From Macrostomum hystrix (taxonomy: Eukaryota; Animalia; Platyhelminthes): DNA of 64,000 nucleotides. The translations under genes were made by a program, and so were the position numbers. This document shows, piece by piece, positions 47,651-58,076 of this stretch. Within the stretch, counting starts at the first letter, position 1. Each line of letters starts with the position of its first letter. The notes beneath the pieces were generated by a model, which saw only the letters and a program-made list of their open reading frames with translations, did no database searches and was not told the origin of the DNA. Location of the stretch: contig CATNEN010000039.1 of NCBI GenBank assembly GCA_950097015.1, forward strand, positions 16,244,001 through 16,308,000, written 5' to 3'.

Positions 47651-50600
47651 CAATTGTGGTTTAGCCCAGCTTCCATGTGCCCTGAAAAGCTAAGGGCTAA
47701 TTGGTAATTGAAAGCAGAAGTCCGAATTATGCCGAATCGGAAATATTTTACTTCTTTCTTACAGTTTCAAACTATTTTTACCGCATAGATAACAGCTAGC
47801 GCCATGCGTTAAGGACTACCATGGTACATATGCACATGCTGTTTCCGATTACAGCGCCATGCTCTTGGAATACCACGGTACATAATGCATACTAAACATT
47901 TTTGCCGGACAGCCCTCGAAAAGTATCCAATTCGACAGCCAAAACTACAAACAAACTTACAGTAGCATTTGAGGGGGCGAGTGGGTCAGCGGCTAACGTC
48001 GCTGCCTCGTTAGACCTTGCGGGGGTGGCTGGAGGGCGGTGTACACCGCCGCGCGCTCTCTGGAATTCCGTCAGCACGATTGGATAAGTGTACACTCATC
48101 ACCCGGCCCCCCCTGAGGACTGATTTCTTATCAGCCTTCCGCCCTGGCTTGGTCTGCTCTGTGCGTATGGGGCGGGGGTGGGGGACACTGCTGCCTATTC
48201 TGGGTGCCTCCTGCCCTCCCCGGCTGGTCTGTGCTGCTGTATGTGGTGCCTGCTCAGGGGAGGCGGCGCGATGGGCGCTAAAGCGCCTAGTTCGCCGGTC
48301 TGGGCGCGTGCCGCTCCGTCGCTTGTGCGACAAGTGCCCCGGGCCCCCCTGCAGATAGTAGATAGCGAGAAAGAGCGAGCGAAGCGAGCTCTTTCGAGCT
48401 TGCTTGCCGCAGCCAATCAAGCTGAAAGCACGCACACAAGATCACCGGAAACGATTCAGGCAGCTGGAAAGCCAATGGGCGCGGTAAGCGCTTTTATCCA
48501 GAGGAACTACCTTCTGGAACCAGCCATGCCGTTCAAAAACCAGACTACTCAACTAGTGCAAAAGAGTGCGTGCAACTACCGAGAAATCTAATTTTCGTAA
48601 CCGCTCCGGTGCAGGTCCTGGCAATAGATAGTAGATAGCTCTTTCGAGCTTGCTTGCCGCAGCCAATCAAGCTGACAGCACGCACACAAGATAGATAGAT
48701 AGACAGTAGCATTTGAATTTTTGTTCCTGCACTCTCCTGCACTTACGAGCAGTTCTCTTTGTTTAATTGACAATAGTTTGTACTTGAAGCCTACATCAAT
48801 TTTGTAAGTTTTTGTCGGTGTCCAATTTAACAGCGATAGGCATTTTGCTGAAACATTTTATTCGTTTGCTAATTAAATGACTTCAAAATGTTGAATCGGA
48901 ACAAAAAGTGAATAAAAGATTTTATTACTACAATCGAAAAAAATTAGGGGCAGACACTCACAAGGTGATATACTCATACCTCAGCAGTCAAATATATGCT
49001 CATGCGTCACGCGTTTGATTCGTAATGCACATAAACTAACAGTAAAATCGGCAAGTCTGGTGGCCAAAGAAAGATGCATTACAACAGAATTTACCAGAGA
49101 CCATACCTGTATTACAATTTACACTCACCCAGCCACTCCGAGATGTTTCAATAGCTATCAAATTTCACATAGATCTCGGAGTCCAGGGGGCTGTTTCGGT
49201 ACGCACAGGCGTACCTACTACCCTGGCTCTGTCATCTGCAAAGAGATGCTCAGAGGGCTGATTTGCAAATCCGTCAATTTGCTACTGCATCTTTCTCTGG
49301 TCCACTTAAATGCAGAAAAACATTTCAACTGGTGCAGGGGTAATCGTTTATTTATCATTTATCATTTATTGCGCGACCGCGTGGAGCGAACCTGTTGCAG
49401 GTCGCGCAATGGCTGCTTCTGTGTCTCTGCAGCCAGCTGCGCCGGAAGCTGCGCCCGCAGCTGTTCTATCGCCTGCTCCATCGACGCCCGCTGCTGCTCT
49501 ATCGCCTGCTCCATCGACGCCCGCTGCTGCTCCATCGCCTGCTCCATCGACGCCCGCTGCTGCTCCATCGCCTGCTCCATCGACGCCCGCTGCTGCTCCA
49601 TCGCCTGCTCCATCGACGCCCGCAGCTGTACCAACTCTGCGTCCTTCGCCGGCCGCTGCTGCTCCAACTGATCTGCGTCCTCCTAATAGTAAAACAATAG
49701 AGGGGGCTTCGAAATAGAGGGGGCAAGCTCTGCGTGAAGCTGCGCGTTCTTCGCCACAAACTGTCGTAATGCAGTATCATTTCAGTAGTATAAGTAACGC
49801 ACACGTTATATTCAGCGTGTATAATAACTGTCTCGCGAGTAATGCAAGTCAAACTCGTGGTAGGAAGTTCCTGGTTTTTGATTATTTCAGCGGAAAAAAT
49901 CAATGCTAGTGGGAATTCATCATCACGTAGAACAGCACCCCGAGAGACAAGTGCATCACGAGCAAGAGAAACAGCTGCAGCGAAGTAATGAAATAAAACG
50001 TTTCCATGACATAGCCAGATTTCATTGATTCTTCAGAACCCTCCTCGTATTTCAAAGTGTATGCAGCGGCATCCAGCAATTTCTTGACTGCCTTCTGGGC
50101 ATTCGATGCCTCACTGAAGCAGAATCGATAGAACTCATGGAAACGCATGGAAACAGAGAATGTCGAGTCGGTTCCGAAATTAGCATTATAGCGGCAAACC
50201 GGAAAATTTTCAGGCGAATCAATTGACGCACTCGTTCATGTGCACAGGACACCGGCAAACCAATGAGGGCAGCCAGCACGTCAACTGAACCAACACCTGA
50301 TAACTGAAACCTGATGTTTCCATACAGAGCCCTGATCTCCCCATGCAACTATCAGGATGGAGTACACGCATAATATTTTCAGATAAACTGCAGTCAGACT
50401 GTTTGAATGAAACTATGCCCATTAACTCCTCAAATGTATTCGCTTCGGAAAGTGCAGACAACAACAAGCGAAGATTCCTTCTGGAGGTCGACTGGTCAGA
50501 GAGCAATATTACAATCCGACACAATTTCTCTGTCAGAATGCTAACTTGTGCTGGAGGTGGTGTACTCGGCAATGCAGATAAATCACCGACAAAACAGCTG

Positions 50601-51353: not shown

Positions 51354-51610
51354 ACGTTAGAGACCTAGTTTTCCCTGAATCTGAGCTTGCCGCGCACACT
51401 ACGATTGGGATATTAGTACGCGATTTGCCTGAAACTGACAGCGACACTTCAGAAATAGTGTTCAAACTCCTTTCGAAGTATTCTTTGCTCAACCCAGGAT
51501 ATAGTGGAGACTCTAATTCCTTATGCGGATGAAATTCAGGGATGCGAAGTTGCATGAGGAAGGATTCCTGTGACCTGAAAACAGAAAGCAACCAGATATA
51601 ATGAAAATGT
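51354..51610. repeat. 257-bp direct repeat (target duplication), left copy
   Basis: ACGTTAGAGACC...ATAATGAAAATGT; appears identical to 57241-57497 by eye. Confidence 0.95.
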
Positions 51611-54600
51611 TAGTGGTGCTTCTCCACCGGGTAAGATGGAGGTTGGCGGTCCAATCATTAATCTGACGATAAATGACGGTGCTCGGAATCGGAGCCGGGG
51701 GGGAGGGGCCCGGCGCAGAGCTGGCTCCTCCCTGCTTGGCCAGGTGGTCAGCAAGCTCGTTACCAGGGAAACCGGCGTGCCCTGGTATCCACTGAAGTCT
51801 GACGGTATTCTTACCGGCCAGGTTATTGAGCTGCCGGACACAGTCGGAGACTGTCCGGGAGGTTGTGGTGGTGTGACAGAGGGCTTGCAGAGCAGCCTGA
51901 CTGTCCGAGTGAAAGATGATAGTCCTGCCTGAGATGTTTTTCTCATTCAACTCCGCAGCGCAGGAGCTGATGGCCAGGACCTCGTTCTGGAAAACGCTCG
52001 AGGATTTTCCAGTGTGTTGGGCGTGTGTGGCGACAACACGTCCGTTGATAAGGATACAGACCCCGAAGCCAGCGGAGCCATCCTTCATGGATCCGTCCGT
52101 GTAGCAGTGGACCTCCTGGGTGTTCCAGTGGTCGCTAACTTGGTCCCTGGTGGGGATGAGAACCTTAAAGCGCTGAAGGAGGTTGAGCGAGCACGGTTCA
52201 CCGTCCGTAAGGACATTGATTCCGTTGCTCGCACCCAAGTCTCTCAGGCAAAGGTCCGTGTGCGGCAGGAGCTTTCGCTTCGCTGCCGCTCGTTGGGGGA
52301 CGAAGCGCACACCGGCATCAAGGAGACGCCGGGCGGTTTTTGCCGCCTCCCCGCGGATAAAGATATCGAGCGGGAGGATGTTCAAGAAGGCGTTGAGGCC
52401 ATCGAAGGGGGCGGATGGCAGGGCGCTCATGATCGTCCGACATGCGCGACCTTGCACTCTCCGAAGAGTCTCATGGCAGGTCTTAAGCTGAAGGGCACTA
52501 GCCCAGATCAGTCCGGCGTACGAGACAGCCGGCCTGACCATAGCAGTGTAGATCCACCATAGGCGTTTGGGGGTGAGACCCCACGTGTTGCCCACCGCCC
52601 TGCGCAGCTGCGCCAGGATCGCAAAGGCCTTTTTGGCTTTGGCATGGACATGAGGAGTCCAGCTGAGCCTGTGATCGAGCGTTATGCCCAGGCATTTAGT
52701 TTGCTTCTGGAAGGTGATGTCCTTTCCATACAGCTGCAGGGGGCGAATATGCCATTTGTTTTTGCTGGTGAACATGATCGCCGCTGTCTTAGACTCGGAG
52801 AGCTTCAGACCGCAGCGAGTTGCCCATCTTTCGGCGTTGTTGATAAAGTTTTGCAGAAGGTCTCGGAGGGCCTCTGGTACCGGGCCAGATGCCACTGCCG
52901 TAACATCATCCGCATAGCCGACCTTTAGGATGGGGTCTGGCTGAGAGTCTCGTAAGAGCTCGTCGATAACCATGTTCCAGAGAACTGGTGAGAGGACGCC
53001 GCCTTGTGGGCAACCTTTGCAGACAGTGACCGTCCGCTGGTGTCCAAGAAGGTGTGCCGTAGCAGTGCGGTGGCGGACCATGTACATGATCCACCTCCTA
53101 AGATGCGAATGCGTGTGCCGCATACGTAGGGCCCTGTCAAACGCCTCGAAGAGAACGTTGTCGAAGGCCCCGTCAATATCCAGGAAGATGCTCAGGGCAA
53201 AGCCGTTCCCGAGGACGGCCTTTTCCAGAGCGTCCACCAGAGCGTGGAGAGCGCTTTCGGTGGAACGTCCCGACCGAAAGGCGTGTTGATTGCCGCTTAG
53301 TGGCATATTTTTCAGCTCCACAGAGAGGAGGCGCCAGAGCACCAATCTCTCCATCAGTTTGACCATGGTGGAGGTAAGGCTAATTGGCCGAAACGATTTA
53401 ATGGAATGGTAGTCCGGGCGGCCTGGCTTGGGGATAAAAACCACCCTCGCCTCGGTCCATGCCTTCGGAACATACCCAAGCACAATGCAAGCCTTAAGGA
53501 GCTTGCAAAGATTTGTGAGGAAGCCATGGCATTTTACCGCCTCGCGGATGAAGGCTGGTATAATGCCGTCCGGCCCCGGGGATTTGAAGGGTTTGAAAGA
53601 CTGGGCTGCCTTGGTAACCCGGTCTTCAGTAATGATGGACGTCGCAAGGATATGACCTCCCTCGGTGTGATCCGGGGGGTCTGTCCCTGCTGGCTCGCTG
53701 GGGAAAAAGGCTGTGAGCATAGTGTCGAGCGTTTCCCCAGGGTTCTCGGTGGGTCGGCCATCGGCCTTCCTCACCGTCGAAAGCTTGGACATTTTGTCCA
53801 GCGTGAGGGCTTTGACAATTCTGGAGGTGGGGCGAGTGCCCTCAAGCTCCTCACAGTATTGCCGCCACTTGCTGTTTTTGGCGTTTCTGACTTCCTTCTT
53901 GAAGCTATGGATGGCTTCGAGATACGCAGCCTGATCAGCCAGGTTTTTTGTCTTCGTGGCCCTGCGGTGCAGCCGCTTCGCCGTTCGACGGAGCTCGCCG
54001 AGCTGCGGATTCCACCATGGGGCCGAAGTTTTGCCTCTGTAAGCTTTGAGGGGGCAGGAGGCCTCGAAGGCGGTGGTCAGCGAGTTGGTGAGAAACTCAG
54101 CTAGCTCATCCGCTTCATCGCAGGTGTTGGCGGGGGGGCTTAGGTTTCGTTGGGTTCCTTCGAGGTTATGCCTGAAGGCTTCCCAATCGGTATTCCTAGC
54201 GTTCCTTTTCCAAGTGATCTGGTTAGTGCAGCGTGCACCCGCCAGTTGGAAAGAGATGTATTTGTGATCGGAGAGGGTGGTCTCCGGCAGAACCTGCCAC
54301 TCCCTAAGGCTCTGGTAAAGCCCAGGTGTGGCTAGAGTGGCGTCGATGACCTCAGACCACCGGCCATTGTCAAAGGTCGGGGTGCTCCCTGTGTTGCAGA
54401 ACTCCAGGGACGTGGTTAAGATGTAGGCAAGGAGGTCCTCGCCTCTCGAGTTAATGTCAGAGCTCCCCCAGTGGGTGTGGTGGGCGTTAATATCGCCAGC
54501 CACTATGAGCTCATAGTTTTTGGCAGCGCAGGTTTCAATCAGAGAGATCAGCTCCTCAGGGACTGCCGGCCTGTCGCCCGGTAAGTAAACCGAGGCGATT

Positions 54601-54920
54601 AAGACGGTTTTTCCTGGGAGGATGTTCTCCGTCTGGATGACACAGGTGTCCCGATCAGAAAGGTCGGGTCTGTGCCAGGCGTTGAGGGAGTCTCTCACGA
54701 GGATGCACGCCCTGGGAGTTTGGTTCTCCCAGTGACGGCTGTTGTAGAGGCAGTGATACCCATTGGGTACATTTTGAGGCTTACCTTTATGAGTCCACGG
54801 CTCCTGGACGAGGATGAGACCCGGCATGTTGAGCTCGACATAGCGCATCAGATTGACGGATGCAGCTATGCAGTGTTGCAGGTTAACCTGCAGGCAGGTG
54901 ATCCCAGTGTGGCCGATCAT
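51513..54920 (-). CDS. ORF2: apurinic-like endonuclease, reverse transcriptase and RNase H; the last ~32 codons come from flanking host DNA
   Basis: APE: QVNLQH, LVQEPW, SVYLP, GDINAHH, TPTF, IDATL, SDHKYI. RT: KSPGPDGI, FRPISLTS, QHAFRSGRST, FLDIDGAFD, PQGGVLSP, YADD. RNase H: YTDGS, NEVLAI, HSDSQAAL, WIPGHAGFPGNELAD. Confidence 0.97.
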   Translation of the reverse strand: MIGHTGITCLQVNLQHCIAASVNLMRYVELNMPGLILVQEPWTHKGKPQNVPNGYHCLYNSRHWENQTPRACILVRDSLNAWHRPDLSDRDTCVIQTENILPGKTVLIASVYLPGDRPAVPEELISLIETCAAKNYELIVAGDINAHHTHWGSSDINSRGEDLLAYILTTSLEFCNTGSTPTFDNGRWSEVIDATLATPGLYQSLREWQVLPETTLSDHKYISFQLAGARCTNQITWKRNARNTDWEAFRHNLEGTQRNLSPPANTCDEADELAEFLTNSLTTAFEASCPLKAYRGKTSAPWWNPQLGELRRTAKRLHRRATKTKNLADQAAYLEAIHSFKKEVRNAKNSKWRQYCEELEGTRPTSRIVKALTLDKMSKLSTVRKADGRPTENPGETLDTMLTAFFPSEPAGTDPPDHTEGGHILATSIITEDRVTKAAQSFKPFKSPGPDGIIPAFIREAVKCHGFLTNLCKLLKACIVLGYVPKAWTEARVVFIPKPGRPDYHSIKSFRPISLTSTMVKLMERLVLWRLLSVELKNMPLSGNQHAFRSGRSTESALHALVDALEKAVLGNGFALSIFLDIDGAFDNVLFEAFDRALRMRHTHSHLRRWIMYMVRHRTATAHLLGHQRTVTVCKGCPQGGVLSPVLWNMVIDELLRDSQPDPILKVGYADDVTAVASGPVPEALRDLLQNFINNAERWATRCGLKLSESKTAAIMFTSKNKWHIRPLQLYGKDITFQKQTKCLGITLDHRLSWTPHVHAKAKKAFAILAQLRRAVGNTWGLTPKRLWWIYTAMVRPAVSYAGLIWASALQLKTCHETLRRVQGRACRTIMSALPSAPFDGLNAFLNILPLDIFIRGEAAKTARRLLDAGVRFVPQRAAAKRKLLPHTDLCLRDLGASNGINVLTDGEPCSLNLLQRFKVLIPTRDQVSDHWNTQEVHCYTDGSMKDGSAGFGVCILINGRVVATHAQHTGKSSSVFQNEVLAISSCAAELNEKNISGRTIIFHSDSQAALQALCHTTTTSRTVSDCVRQLNNLAGKNTVRLQWIPGHAGFPGNELADHLAKQGGASSAPGPSPPAPIPSTVIYRQINDWTANLHLTRWRSTTNIFIISGCFLFSGHRNPSSCNFASLNFIRIRN

Positions 54921-56503
54921 GGTCCAGCGGGAGTCTCCTTGAGCAGCTCGTCCTCCTCAGACGGGGTCGGGCTGCAGACCTCCATGAGTAGCGGCGCGCC
55001 CGCAACCGCTGTGGAGGGAACGGCGGGAATCGCTGCGGAGAGCTGCTGCTCTGACCGCTGCGTGTCCCGGCCGCTCCACCCAACAACGGTGCAGTCGCTG
55101 CCGTCACTCGACGCCTCGCCCTCGGGGGTCGGGTCCGTGTGGATGGCAGCCTCCTTCCGGTGAGGGGGATCCTCAGACCAGTCGGTGGCCACCGCTCCGT
55201 GGGTCCCGGCACTTTGCGGCTGGCTGGGAGGAAGGGAGGTTTGCGCTTTTGTAGCGCGGGAGCGCTCCAGGTGCTCTCTGAGCGCTCGGGCTTCGCTGAG
55301 CGCCCGCAAGACCAGGCCCGATTTGCGGTTGTTGCGGGCTGGTCTACGATCTCGGGGGCCGGATTCGGCGATGCGGATATTTTTGCCCGGGCGGGGGTCC
55401 GCGGACGTTGCATGCCGCTTAGCTGGCGGAGCTTTCGCTCCAGAGCCAGGAGCGGCCCGCTTATTTTCCGATCCCTCCCCGGCCTTCCTCTCCTGACAAT
55501 CCAGGATGGTCAGCGGGTAGAGTCCCGGTTTGATTACGCTCTTGTGAGGGATCCTTTTGGACCAGGCTTCGGAGAAGCCGTAGATCGCCGTGAAACCCTC
55601 CGCTTCTTTGCGGACGGTTTCGTGGCAGATCAGCCCGGAGGCTGGGAGGTCCGGGTTCATCTTCAGCAGCAGCTGCCGAAGTTGGTCCCCGGACCGGATT
55701 GAGCAGGCGTCGGGGACCCAGACACGATGACGTCGGGTCCGTGGACGCTCGGACTCGGTGGTGCACCTCAGTCTTCCGACATCGGTGCCCCACTTGAAGT
55801 CTTTGATCCGATCGCGCAGTAGGCGGCTATCCCCCGCCGATTTGCACCAGAGGAGGACAGCCCCCTCCTGCGCTTCGGACCTGACAACGCTGACTGGTGT
55901 CCCTGCCAGTGCCAGGTCCGTGAGGCCCTCGTCGATGGTCCTGAGCATGCTTTTGAGCTGCTCGTTTGAGAGGTCCTGTTCCTCGCCGACCACAATGATC
56001 GCCGGCTGGACAGGCTCCCGCTTGGCTTTGGAGGCATAGGTCTCCTTGGCCTTGCTGGCGTTGGACGTGCCGGCCTTGTGGGTGGTGGTGGCCGTGATGG
56101 CGGTGGGGGCGGCGGCTCCAGATGGCCCTGCTGCGCCTTCCACGCTCTTTCCGTCGGCGTCGGTGCCGGCCTTGGAGATGGTGCTGGCCGGAGCGGCGGT
56201 GGGGGGAGCGGCGGATCCAGGTGGCCCTGCCGCATCTTTCGCACCCGCCTCGTGTGCAGGTGTCGGGCGCCCACCAGTCGCAGCCGCCGCAGCATTACGG
56301 CGGCGTTCGTTGCGCTTCTGGTTGCGCCTTACACGCGCTTCCTCCGAGCGCTTGCGGCTCGGGTTGCGTTTATTCTGGTCGACGATTTCAGTGGCGGGAT
56401 TCTCAGTCCCACCAGCTGCACCGAGGACGTGGGACCTGCCAGTGGCAGTGTCCGGAGCGGCCGAGTTTAACTCGGTTTCGAAAGAAGAGATGGGCGAGGC
56501 CAT
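54917..56503 (-). CDS. ORF1 nucleic-acid-binding protein, probable ATG at 56503 (MASPISS...)
   Basis: Basic and low-complexity N-terminus, KETYASKAK, and a globular core ending ...RPRTRRHRVWVP, which recalls DUF4780-type LOA ORF1 (inference). No CCHC knuckles seen. Its stop overlaps the ORF2 start (ATGA). Confidence 0.85.
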   Translation of the reverse strand: MASPISSFETELNSAAPDTATGRSHVLGAAGGTENPATEIVDQNKRNPSRKRSEEARVRRNQKRNERRRNAAAAATGGRPTPAHEAGAKDAAGPPGSAAPPTAAPASTISKAGTDADGKSVEGAAGPSGAAAPTAITATTTHKAGTSNASKAKETYASKAKREPVQPAIIVVGEEQDLSNEQLKSMLRTIDEGLTDLALAGTPVSVVRSEAQEGAVLLWCKSAGDSRLLRDRIKDFKWGTDVGRLRCTTESERPRTRRHRVWVPDACSIRSGDQLRQLLLKMNPDLPASGLICHETVRKEAEGFTAIYGFSEAWSKRIPHKSVIKPGLYPLTILDCQERKAGEGSENKRAAPGSGAKAPPAKRHATSADPRPGKNIRIAESGPRDRRPARNNRKSGLVLRALSEARALREHLERSRATKAQTSLPPSQPQSAGTHGAVATDWSEDPPHRKEAAIHTDPTPEGEASSDGSDCTVVGWSGRDTQRSEQQLSAAIPAVPSTAVAGAPLLMEVCSPTPSEEDELLKETPAGP

Positions 56504-56707
56504 GGCTGAAAAGCAGGTGGGGGGCTGCTCGTTACACGAGTGAGAAAAGCCCGACTGGCCGACACCCCAAGCCAGCCGGGAGCAGAAAAAAGGCACCGTT
56601 AGCGGCTGGAATACTCCCCAACCAAAGCGCGGACTGAAGTCCGGCAAAGCCCAGCAGCACGGATGCACTGGGGACATTAGAGGGTACCAAAAGGCCGGTA
56701 CCGAGGC

Positions 56708-56973
56708 CTGCGGACTGGCCGCATACCCTGTTAAGGTCAAAGGGTGACACCTTTCCCTCAGAGCCGTAGCCAGAGGTACCTGATCACGCACAGGTGCACG
56801 AAAACTGCGGACTGGCCGCATACCCTGTTAAGGTCAATGGGTGACACCTTTCCCTCAGAGCCGTAGCCAGAGGTACCTGATCACGCACAGGTGCACGAAC
56901 GTTGCGGACTGGCCGCATACCCTGTTAAGGTCAAAGGGTGGCACCTTTCCCTCCAGCCGGGGCTAGAGGTACC
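56708..56973 (-). repeat. ~2.7 copies of a 97-bp structured repeat in the retrotransposon 5' UTR
   Basis: TGCGGACTGGCCGCATACCCTGTTAAGGTCAA recurs at 56709, 56806 and 56903. Confidence 0.9.
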
Positions 56974-57015
56974 CAGTTTGGCCAGAGGCCCTGGATGGGT
57001 CATCCAGCGCTGTTG

Positions 57016-57240
57016 CCCATTCTGTCCGGCTGCCCTAGGGGCAGCCTTGAACACTCGCGGGGCGTGTACCCATGGGTCAGCTGACGGGACAGCGTGGAGG
57101 GATTCCTGCACCCGAAGGCACAGGTCTCCTTCCTGCCAAGCCTGCTCAAAAGCGACTGCAGGTGTGAGGCATCGCAGACCTTAGCCCGTGGGCCTGGTCT
57201 GACTCATACCTCACAGGCACTGTGTCCCGCCGGTGCGAGC
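57016..57240 (-). ncRNA. Predicted HDV-like self-cleaving ribozyme at the retrotransposon 5' end
   Basis: P1 GCUCGC (57240-57235)/GCGAGU (57058-57053) with G1-U wobble. P2 CCCAU/AUGGG, P3 GGG/CCC, L3 UACACGC, P1.1 AC/GU, P4 GGCUGCCC-CUA-GGGCAGCC. J4/2 contains C57024. Long structured J1/2. Confidence 0.75.
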
Positions 57241-57497
57241 ACGTTAGAGACCTAGTTTTCCCTGAATCTGAGCTTGCCGCGCACACTACGATTGGGATAT
57301 TAGTACGCGATTTGCCTGAAACTGACAGCGACACTTCAGAAATAGTGTTCAAACTCCTTTCGAAGTATTCTTTGCTCAACCCAGGATATAGTGGAGACTC
57401 TAATTCCTTATGCGGATGAAATTCAGGGATGCGAAGTTGCATGAGGAAGGATTCCTGTGACCTGAAAACAGAAAGCAACCAGATATAATGAAAATGT
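57241..57497. repeat. 257-bp direct repeat (target duplication), right copy
   Basis: Appears identical to 51354-51610. Confidence 0.95.
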
Positions 57498-58076
57498 AAG
57501 ATCCAACATTGGAGAAGAAATGCACTAAATAACACTAAAGCAATATCAACCTATTATCTTACGTGTCATTGGCATGCAGCTCTAATTCCAACTGATTCCT
57601 CTGTTCTCGTGACGCGGGGCCGCGAGTTCGGTCTGGCCAGTCGGGGTCGATGCAGTGCCAGCTGCTGGTCCGTCGCCGTCGCGCCGCGCTCGATGCTGTG
57701 CAACAGGAGTGTCCGGGGAGTGGTTCCGCTTCTGTGGGGAAATGTGAAACATCTCTGTATTATGCAGTCATAATTTTGCTTAGAGCATGTCCTTGAGGCA
57801 GTGGACAAAATGTACTATCGCTCGCCCGCTTCGCTATCGCTCGCTCCTTCGCTAGCTGCTCGCCACGTGCCGAAAACGTGCAGCGTACTATTCAAATATC
57901 CAGCTTTAATATGCATTGACCTAAAAACATTACAATTCATTATAACAATAAAAACAAAACATATCAATATAGGAACAAACTATACTTAAAAGTTGCATAT
58001 ACTTATTTATTTTAAAATCTTTAATTACGGCGTAAATGTAATGAAAGGAAATTTATTTCTAAGCACTATGAAAAAT

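What the first reader, a model, noticed from the sequence alone, without database searches (positions are those of the whole stretch)
57016..57240. HDV-like self-cleaving ribozyme defines the exact 5' end of the retrotransposon
Seen in sequence (minus strand): the element's first base, G57240, directly abuts the target duplication and begins GCUCGC, which pairs with GCGAGU (57058-57053) through a G1-U wobble. The rest follows the nested double-pseudoknot order: P2 CCCAU (57076-72), P3 GGG, L3 UACACGC, P3' CCC, P1', GU, P4 hairpin GGCUGCCC/GGGCAGCC, then C57024-AGA and P2' AUGGG. The usual P1.1 (CC in L3 pairing with GG) is replaced by a compensatory AC/GU pair. J1/2 is ~155 nt and itself multi-hairpin (GGCGGGACA/UGUCCCGUC, UGUGAGGUAU/AUGCCUCACA). 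Established: HDV-like ribozymes process the 5' ends of R2, RTE, L1Tc and some LOA-type elements. Inference: this is a variant (6-bp P1, A-U in P1.1, CAGA J4/2) that releases element RNA from read-through transcripts.
Basis: partly seen in the sequence, partly recalled or inferred. Interest (0 to 1): 0.9.

Follow-up and report, generated by a model that had tools for sequence, protein, structure and literature searches.

The report
HDV-like ribozyme heading flatworm LINEs
The first 225 bases of this flatworm jumping gene fold like a hepatitis-delta-type self-cutting RNA. Its predicted cut site is exactly where every full-length copy begins, so this is a well-supported new example of a known trick, and the same ribozyme head sits on several otherwise very different jumping-gene families.

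Summary
Minus-strand 57240-57016 gives the full HDV-like double pseudoknot:
- P1 of 6 bp with a G1-U wobble, P2 of 5 bp, and P3 of 3 bp.
- A 7-nt L3 (UACACGC) and a 2-bp P1.1.
- An 8-bp P4.
- A J4/2 reading C-AGA, with the candidate catalytic C at 57024.
- A 158-nt J1/2 that folds alone into a closed domain (z -4.8).

Support:
- All 30 genomic copies fetched start at the same G, with unrelated upstream DNA.
- In 9 unambiguous full-length copies (11 of 12 pairs scored), an 8-13 bp target duplication abuts that G.
- A strict descriptor hits 2 other sites in about 668 kb, and 2 of 40,000 shuffles.

Limits: there was no covariation (copies are 96-100% alike), no Rfam match, no RNA reads, and no cleavage assay.

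New here: the ribozyme plus a 97-nt repeat array is 96-97% identical on five LINE lineages whose ORF1 proteins are only 36-50% identical.

The genome is Macrostomum hystrix. The scan already reported what appears to be this ribozyme family on other pieces of the genome (s1-278220, s1-394531, s1-408102).

Verdict: very probably a real ribozyme, and a new member of a known kind.

The parts
57241..57497 (-). Upstream copy of the 257-bp target-site duplication (host intron end plus exon). The predicted cleavage site is the bond between 57241 and 57240.
   Evidence: Direct repeat with 51354-51610. Only these two copies exist in the genome.
57235..57240 (-). P1 5' strand, GCUCGC. G57240 is the element's first base.
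   Evidence: All 30 copies start here. P1 has probability 0.40 in a nested ensemble and adds -7.9 kcal/mol.
57083..57231 (-). Structured J1/2 (P1.2-like) domain. It is closed by a 9-bp helix (GGCGGGACA / UGUCCCGUC) and flanked by 3-nt and 6-nt linkers (57234-57232 and 57082-57077).
   Evidence: It folds alone to -79.6 kcal/mol, z = -4.77, and the MFE equals the centroid. Closing-helix pair probabilities are 0.79-0.97.
57072..57076 (-). P2 5' strand, CCCAU.
   Evidence: Pairs with 57020-57016. Invariant in 30 copies. Probability 0.39 in the nested ensemble, where it excludes P1.
57059..57071 (-). P3 (GGG/CCC) enclosing L3 (UACACGC). A57067 and C57066 are the 5' half of P1.1.
   Evidence: P3 is invariant. 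L3 shares U1, C3, C5 and G6 with the UCCUCGU loop inside the R2 motif CCUCCUCGUGG quoted in PMC5035012.
57051..57058 (-). P1 3' strand, GCGAGU (57058-57053), then G57052 and U57051, the 3' half of P1.1.
57028..57046 (-). P4 hairpin, 8 bp with a CUA loop.
   Evidence: Pair probability at least 0.99. Older subfamilies carry uncompensated changes at positions 200 and 210.
57021..57027 (-). J4/2, GGACAGA, with the candidate catalytic C57024 four bases before P2'.
   Evidence: Invariant in 30 copies.
57016..57020 (-). P2 3' strand, AUGGG.
56708..56998 (-). Array of 97-nt tandem repeats directly 3' of the ribozyme (3 units here). It belongs to the shared 5' head module.
   Evidence: Other copies have 2-9 units. 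No unusual fold (z = -0.27).
51611..56707 (-). Body of the LINE. ORF1 runs 56821-54920, with a probable true start near codon 107. ORF2 runs from 54920 and carries AP endonuclease, reverse transcriptase and RNase H domains. This copy is truncated about 505 nt before the family's normal 3' end.
   Evidence: Pfam. All other copies continue past 51611 and end in short AAGTCAAG-type repeats.

Best explanation
The first 225 nt of this LINE RNA form an HDV-like self-cleaving ribozyme.

Proposed mechanism:
1. The element is transcribed as part of a longer RNA. In this copy that would be the host gene it sits in, on the same strand.
2. The ribozyme folds. A very stable 149-nt domain in J1/2 brings P1 and P2 together.
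3. C57024 in J4/2 catalyses cleavage of the bond 5' of G57240.
4. This releases element RNA whose first base is G1. That RNA is the template for target-primed reverse transcription, so every full-length DNA copy begins at G1.

Shown here: the fold, its improbability by chance, its invariance across copies, and the exact shared 5' end.

Inferred: cleavage itself, co-transcription, and any role of the fold in translating the uncapped RNA.

The ribozyme travels with a 97-nt repeat array as a 5' head module. That module is now carried by at least five deeply diverged LINE lineages of Macrostomum hystrix.
For: - Canonical order and sizes of all helices, with the G1-U wobble, an L3 reading U.C.CG. 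and a C four bases before P2'.
- Chance rate of about 5e-5 per anchored site in shuffles, and 2 non-family hits in about 668 kb with the strict descriptor.
- 30 of 30 copies begin at G1 with unrelated flanks. In 9 unambiguous full-length copies an 8-13 bp target duplication abuts G1; 11 of 12 pairs scored, two of them inside tandem repeats.
- In a nested ensemble P1 (0.40) and P2 (0.39) are the main, mutually exclusive partners of their strands, as expected for a pseudoknot.
- The J1/2 domain has z = -4.77. This fits the published 'pinch' activation by structured J1/2 domains (PMC4908430).
- Large J1/2 loops of 216-498 nt are active in silkmoth R2 (PMC3774820).
- The head is 96-97% identical on lineages whose ORF1 proteins are 36-50% identical, so it behaves as a retained functional cassette.
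- The same protein architecture (AP endonuclease, RT, RNase H) carries an active HDV-like ribozyme in L1Tc (PMC6765202).
Against: - No Rfam HDV-type family matches, even at E up to 10 on a 261-nt slice. This is expected given the 158-nt J1/2 and the pseudoknots, but it is still a failed test.
- No covariation: 0 pairs change on both sides, because the copies are 96-100% alike.
- P4 carries uncompensated changes in older subfamilies.
- The thermodynamic model favours a 4-bp extension of P4 (189-192 with 214-217, probability 0.8-0.9). That extension would pair the catalytic C with the P1.1 G.
- P2 is only 5 bp and the linkers total 9 nt. In the Agam-2-1 constructs, a shortened P2 with long linkers cleaved slowly (PMC4908430).
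- No RNA reads were available. The only runs found were DNA-like contigs.
Confidence: 0.78

Rival explanations
1. The exact 5' end comes from an internal promoter that starts transcription at G1, as in jockey- or I-type LINEs. On this view the HDV-like drawing is a structured 5' UTR without catalysis. Both could also be true together, as in L1Tc, where the first 77 nt are both promoter and ribozyme.
For: - A uniform 5' end is equally expected from a fixed start site.
- The head includes a tandem 97-nt array. Tandem arrays of this kind serve as promoters in the 5' ends of some LINEs, such as mouse L1 monomers (my own knowledge).
- L1Tc shows that the two functions can coexist (PMC3383444 abstract).
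Against: - This does not explain why a complete double pseudoknot with the catalytic-core signature starts exactly at base 1 (about 5e-5 by chance).
- The repeat array lies downstream of the ribozyme, so a promoter there would not produce RNAs that start at G1.
- The first bases (GCUCGC) do not resemble an initiator motif (inference from my own knowledge).
Confidence: 0.12
2. The fold is a ribozyme-derived relic. It descends from an HDV-like ribozyme but now serves mainly as a protein-binding or translation-initiation structure, with little or no cleavage.
For: - R2 5' ribozyme folds also bind the R2 protein and are thought to act as an IRES (PMC6765202).
- The predicted competing P4 extension sequesters C217.
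- P2 is short and the linkers are long (PMC4908430).
Against: - All catalytic-core positions are intact and invariant in young, 99-100% identical copies.
- The DNA 5' ends coincide with the predicted scissile bond.
Confidence: 0.07
3. The match is a chance resemblance in a GC-rich, highly structured 5' UTR.
For: - With J1/2 left free up to 200 nt, the loose descriptor hits 54 positions in the 64-kb window on both strands.
- The scan has looked at thousands of windows.
Against: - Only 2 of 40,000 shuffles pass when the motif is anchored at base 1 with G-U and a P4.
- The strict descriptor gives 2 non-family hits in about 668 kb.
- The motif sits at the one position where it is predicted to be.
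Confidence: 0.03

Closest known systems
R2 retrotransposon ribozymes (Drosophila, silkmoths and other animals)
   Same: - HDV-like double pseudoknot at the element's 5' end that trims a co-transcript.
- P1 of 6-7 bp and P2 of at least 5 bp.
- A 7-nt L3 of the U.C.CG. type.
- Very long J1/2 loops (216-498 nt in silkmoths) (PMC3774820, PMC5035012).
   Different: - R2 has a restriction-like endonuclease and a single ORF, and inserts only in 28S rDNA.
- This element has an AP endonuclease, two ORFs and an RNase H domain, and inserts at dispersed sites.
- The co-transcript would come from host genes, not from rRNA.
[quoted passage not shown]
   Same: A stable helical domain in J1/2, joined by short linkers, that brings P1 and P2 together (PMC4908430).
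   Different: - Here the domain is a 149-nt multi-branch structure, not a single P1.2 helix.
- P2 is 5 bp here, against 12 bp in Agam-2.
L1TcRz / Pr77 of Trypanosoma cruzi L1Tc and the ingi clade
   Same: - A LINE with AP endonuclease, RT and RNase H.
- An HDV-like ribozyme as its first bases.
- A 5' hallmark shared by several elements of the clade (PMC3185411, PMC4035085, PMC6765202).
   Different: - L1TcRz is compact (77 nt) and doubles as an internal promoter.
- This head is 225 nt and is followed by a 97-nt tandem array.
- Promoter activity was not tested here.
Genomic HDV ribozyme
   Same: - The same helix order.
- A G1-U wobble at the cleavage site.
- A catalytic C four bases before P2'.
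- CAA before P4 (my own knowledge of the HDV sequence, not checked here).
   Different: - P1 is 6 bp here rather than 7.
- L3 is 7 nt here rather than 8.
- P1.1 is C-G plus A-U rather than two C-G pairs.
- J1/2 is 158 nt here rather than a few bases.

Membership tests
HDV-like self-cleaving ribozymes | Nested double pseudoknot in the order P1, J1/2, P2, P3, L3, P3', P1', P1.1, P4, J4/2, P2' | tested here: met
   Read from the sequence. Recovered by my descriptor scans.
HDV-like self-cleaving ribozymes | P1 of 6-7 bp starting at the cleavage site, usually with a G-U wobble as its first pair | tested here: met
   6 bp with G1-U188. The size range comes from PMC3774820 and PMC4908430.
HDV-like self-cleaving ribozymes | 3-bp P3 with an L3 of about 7-8 nt, and a P1.1 of 1-2 pairs between L3 and the bases after P1' | tested here: met
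   GGG/CCC with L3 UACACGC. C175-G189 and A174-U190 form P1.1. All are invariant in 30 copies.
HDV-like self-cleaving ribozymes | Catalytic cytosine in J4/2 just before P2', and P2 of at least 5 bp | tested here: met
   C57024-AGA followed by AUGGG, which pairs with CCCAU. Its role in catalysis was not testable.
HDV-like self-cleaving ribozymes | Site-specific self-cleavage that leaves a 5'-OH on the downstream product | not testable with these tools
   No RNA runs were found. The indirect support is that the DNA copies begin exactly at the predicted product end.
HDV-like self-cleaving ribozymes | Pairings supported by compensatory changes among relatives | tested here: inconclusive
   0 of 80 pairs change on both sides, because the copies are 96-100% identical. 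More distant relatives could not be fetched.
Rfam HDV-type families (HDV_ribozyme, CPEB3, drz-Agam and relatives) | A covariance-model match | tested here: not met
   No such family was reported at E up to 10 on 14 kb, 261 nt or 81 nt slices. These models carry no pseudoknots and have short J1/2 regions.
R2 elements | Restriction-like endonuclease, a single ORF, and insertion in 28S rDNA | tested here: not met
   AP endonuclease, two ORFs and dispersed insertion sites.
RNase H-bearing AP-endonuclease LINEs (I / LOA / ingi-L1Tc group) | ORF2 with AP endonuclease, reverse transcriptase and RNase H, in that order | tested here: met
   Pfam hits PF03372/PF14529, PF00078 and PF00075. The exact clade was not resolved.

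The most novel reading that the evidence does not exclude
The ribozyme plus the 97-nt repeat array is a portable 5' head cassette that has recently been exchanged among at least five deeply diverged LINE lineages of one genome. ORF1 proteins are 36-50% identical across these lineages, while the heads are 96-97% identical. The exchange probably happened by recombination or template switching within the repeat array. If so, a self-cleaving RNA would be acting as a shared, swappable part of LINE architecture.
Probability: 0.55. Interest if true: 0.55.

Novelty: new member of a known kind. Interest (0 to 1): 0.4.

Why it matters
HDV-like ribozymes at LINE 5' ends explain how elements without their own promoter obtain a defined RNA start from host transcripts. 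This case extends the mechanism to free-living flatworms. In the library searched, I found no paper linking HDV-like ribozymes to flatworm LINEs.

It also offers a large natural J1/2 domain for testing the 'pinch' model of ribozyme activation.

The near-identical head on very different LINE bodies suggests that the 5' processing module is exchanged between families. That bears on how LINE 5' ends evolve. M. hystrix has an inbred line and published RNA-seq and Iso-Seq data, and its relative M. lignano has established transgenesis.

Tried and rejected
- **Rfam.** cmscan at E up to 10 on three slice sizes gave no ribozyme family.
- **Covariation across 30 copies.** None, because the copies are too similar.
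- **Older copies.** Eight copies with 89-96% identity were fetched in the hope of diverged heads. All are 5'-truncated.
- **Other families in this genome.** ORF2 families of 1238 aa and 1287 aa were located. I did not try to obtain those letters another way, so their heads were not read. The exception is any head already among the fetched loci.
- **RNA evidence.** Only four small contig-type runs were found, none recorded as RNA. Their contigs break at 57240/57241 into other flanks, which shows other DNA insertions, not RNA ends.
- **Metagenome scans.** Two exact-pattern scans for the core gave 0 hits.
- **Promoter scan.** The bacterial-type promoter and terminator scan of the head is not meaningful for an animal.
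- **HDV-like L3 string in a flank.** A string GCC-UCCUCGCU-GGC in the flanks of L023 and L028 has its P1-like partner downstream rather than upstream, so it does not give the HDV topology. I dropped it.
- **Complex prediction and structure tools.** Not relevant to an RNA finding.

Full report
**What is there**

On the minus strand the window carries a LINE whose first base is G57240. ORF1 runs 56821-54920 and has no Pfam domain above threshold. ORF2 starts at 54920 and has AP endonuclease, reverse transcriptase and RNase H domains.

The genome statistics are 220,453,370 bases in 42 contigs, with contig lengths of 13,505,968 and 35,345,953. They equal Table 1 for the Macrostomum hystrix assembly in PMC10468722. 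The nearest named proteins are from M. lignano.

**Check of the observation**

Numbering from G57240 as position 1:

| Element | Positions | Notes |
|---|---|---|
| P1 | 1-6 with 183-188 | G1-U188 wobble |
| Linker | 7-9 | 3 nt |
| J1/2 closed domain | 10-158 | multi-branch |
| Linker | 159-164 | 6 nt |
| P2 | 165-169 with 221-225 | 5 bp |
| P3 | 170-172 with 180-182 | 3 bp |
| L3 | 173-179 | UACACGC |
| P1.1 | A174-U190 and C175-G189 | 2 bp |
| P4 | 195-202 with 206-213 | 8 bp |
| J4/2 | 214-220 | C217 = C57024, four bases before P2' |

- J1/2 is 158 nt in total.
- The minimum-free-energy fold of the 231 nt recovers P1, the J1/2 domain and P4. It gives a P3 shifted by one base (z = -3.98). 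PMC4908430 reports the same P3 shift for prediction on a proven ribozyme.
- The J1/2 domain alone folds to -79.6 kcal/mol, with z = -4.77 and the MFE equal to the centroid.
- In a nested ensemble, P1 has probability 0.40 and P2 0.39. Each is the main partner of its strands. They exclude each other only because the model forbids pseudoknots.

**Is it more than chance?**

- With J1/2 free up to 200 nt, a loose descriptor is not rare. It hits 54 positions in the 64-kb window on both strands.
- Anchored at the element's first base, it matches 20 of 40,000 dinucleotide shuffles of the first 330 nt.
- With G1-U and a P4 of at least 5 bp, it matches 2 of 40,000.
- A stricter descriptor requires U, C and G at the L3 positions that matter in HDV and R2, the wobble, and a C in J4/2. 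It recovered all 32 instances of this head in the sequence I held (the window's own copy counted more than once). It found only two other sites in about 334 kb scanned on both strands.

**Does the cut site equal the element's end?**

- The first 231 nt have at least 40 scored matches in the genome, from 203 first-look candidates, at 96-100% identity.
- All 30 fetched copies begin with the same G, and their upstream DNA is unrelated.
- For 12 full-length copies I paired the 5' and 3' loci. A duplicated string was found in 11 of them. In 9 it is an unambiguous 8-13 bp target duplication. It abuts G1 on one side and the family's AAGTCAAG-type tail on the other. The other two pairs lie in tandem repeats, which makes the duplication ambiguous.
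- Contigs from two other public studies also break at 57240/57241 into different flanks.
- So the RNA that is copied into DNA starts at G1. That is the 3' product end an HDV-like ribozyme would leave.

**What could not be shown**

- *Covariation.* There is none. Across 19 distinct sequences no pair changes on both sides. P1 (apart from one base change in one decayed copy), P2, P3, P1.1 and J4/2 simply do not vary.
- *Subfamily-level differences in the core.* These are the last base of L3 (C or U) and two uncompensated changes in P4. P4 is the least constrained part of such ribozymes (PMC3774820).
- *Older copies.* Those I fetched were all 5'-truncated.
- *Rfam.* No family matched. I attribute this to the long J1/2 and to the pseudoknots, which such models ignore.
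- *RNA reads.* No RNA run was found.
- *A caveat from thermodynamics.* The nested model favours a 4-bp extension of P4 that pairs C217 with G189 (probability 0.8-0.9). The active fold must therefore compete with an inactive one.

**Comparison with what is known**

  - P1 is 6 or 7 bp and P2 at least 5 bp (PMC3774820).
  - P1.1 is one or two pairs (PMC4908430).
  - J1/2 is 216-498 nt in silkmoth R2 (PMC3774820).
  - Structured J1/2 domains accelerate cleavage by bringing P1 and P2 together (PMC4908430).
- The L3 here shares four of seven bases, in register, with the loop inside the conserved R2 string CCUCCUCGUGG (PMC5035012).
- The element is not an R2, because it has an AP endonuclease, two ORFs and dispersed sites. 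Its ORF2 domain order is that of L1Tc.
- I found no paper in the library that links HDV-like ribozymes to flatworm LINEs. A 2021 paper says that none of the 17 known Schistosoma mansoni non-LTR elements had been tied to a ribozyme before its twister variants (PMC8501958 abstract).
- Earlier notes of this scan (s1-278220, s1-394531, s1-408102) appear to describe the same ribozyme family on other pieces of this genome and reached the same reading. I treated them as leads and repeated the tests.

**A result beyond the finding**

- The 30 heads sit on five different bodies. After the ribozyme and a 97-nt tandem array (2-9 units), the sequences fall into five clusters that do not align at the DNA level.
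- ORF1 proteins of the other four clusters are 36-50% identical to the window's ORF1. Their ORF2s differ too, at 1245, 1273 and 1287-1320 aa.
- Yet the head is 96-97% identical among them.
- Each cluster has 2-14 independent insertions, so each head-body combination transposes as a unit.
- The simplest reading is recent exchange of the head between lineages, with breakpoints in or just after the repeat array. Similarity to the window copy ends at positions 520, 566 or 598 in different clusters.
- This shows the head is a functional cassette. It cannot say which of its parts, the ribozyme or the repeats, is the reason.

**This particular copy is unusual**

- It lacks the last ~505 nt of the family. 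All other copies continue past 51611.
- It is flanked by a 257-bp duplication that contains a splice-acceptor-like site and open reading frame of a host gene on the same strand.
- Normal copies have duplications of 8-13 bp.
- The 3' junction has a 2-base overlap (AC).
- Priming of reverse transcription at an internal site, with widely staggered nicks, would explain both oddities. This is inference.
- The copy cannot be autonomous, but its ribozyme is the young, fully paired form.

**Verdict**

I put the probability that this RNA self-cleaves 5' of G57240 at about 0.78. The main rival is a fixed transcription start without catalysis, which could also coexist with a ribozyme as in L1Tc. It is a new member of a known kind, of moderate interest. 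The shared head cassette is the part most worth following.

Noticed in passing
L012-L014, L017, L018, L020-L030 (first ~530-600 nt of each element) compared with window 57240-56640: The ribozyme plus the 97-nt repeat head is 96-97% identical on five LINE bodies. Their ORF1 proteins are only 36-50% identical and their ORF2 lengths differ (1245, 1273 and 1287-1320 aa). This suggests recent exchange of the 5' head between lineages.
   Followed up: partly
window 56708-56998 (minus strand): A tandem array of 97-nt units lies directly after the ribozyme. There are 3 units here and 2-9 in other copies. It has no unusual predicted RNA structure, and its function (promoter, translation element or recombination site) is unknown.
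   Followed up: partly
window 51354-51613 and 57241-57500: This copy is 3'-truncated by about 505 nt and is flanked by a 257-bp target duplication. The family norm is 8-13 bp. The 3' junction has a 2-base overlap, which suggests internally primed reverse transcription with widely staggered nicks.
   Followed up: partly
window 57461-57497 and 51574-51610 (minus strand): The duplicated target contains a polypyrimidine tract and a CAG that look like a 3' splice site, followed by an open frame (51591-51106, 161 codons, no Pfam hit). The element therefore sits in a host gene on the same strand, and the acceptor is present twice.
   Followed up: no
L034, L037, L038, L039, L044, L045 (3' flanks): Many full-length copies of this family are inserted in tandem-repeat or satellite DNA. 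This hints at a target preference, or at better survival of copies in such regions.
   Followed up: no
L023:1829-1842 (+) and L028:2312-2325 (+): A repeat in the upstream flanks of two copies contains GCC-UCCUCGCU-GGC, which I recall as the HDV genomic P3-L3 string. The complement of the following 7 bases lies downstream, so the arrangement does not give the HDV topology. It is probably unrelated.
   Followed up: partly
window 49419-49682: An array of six 33-nt direct repeats, GC-rich, lies within overlapping open frames on both strands, downstream of the host exon region.
   Followed up: no
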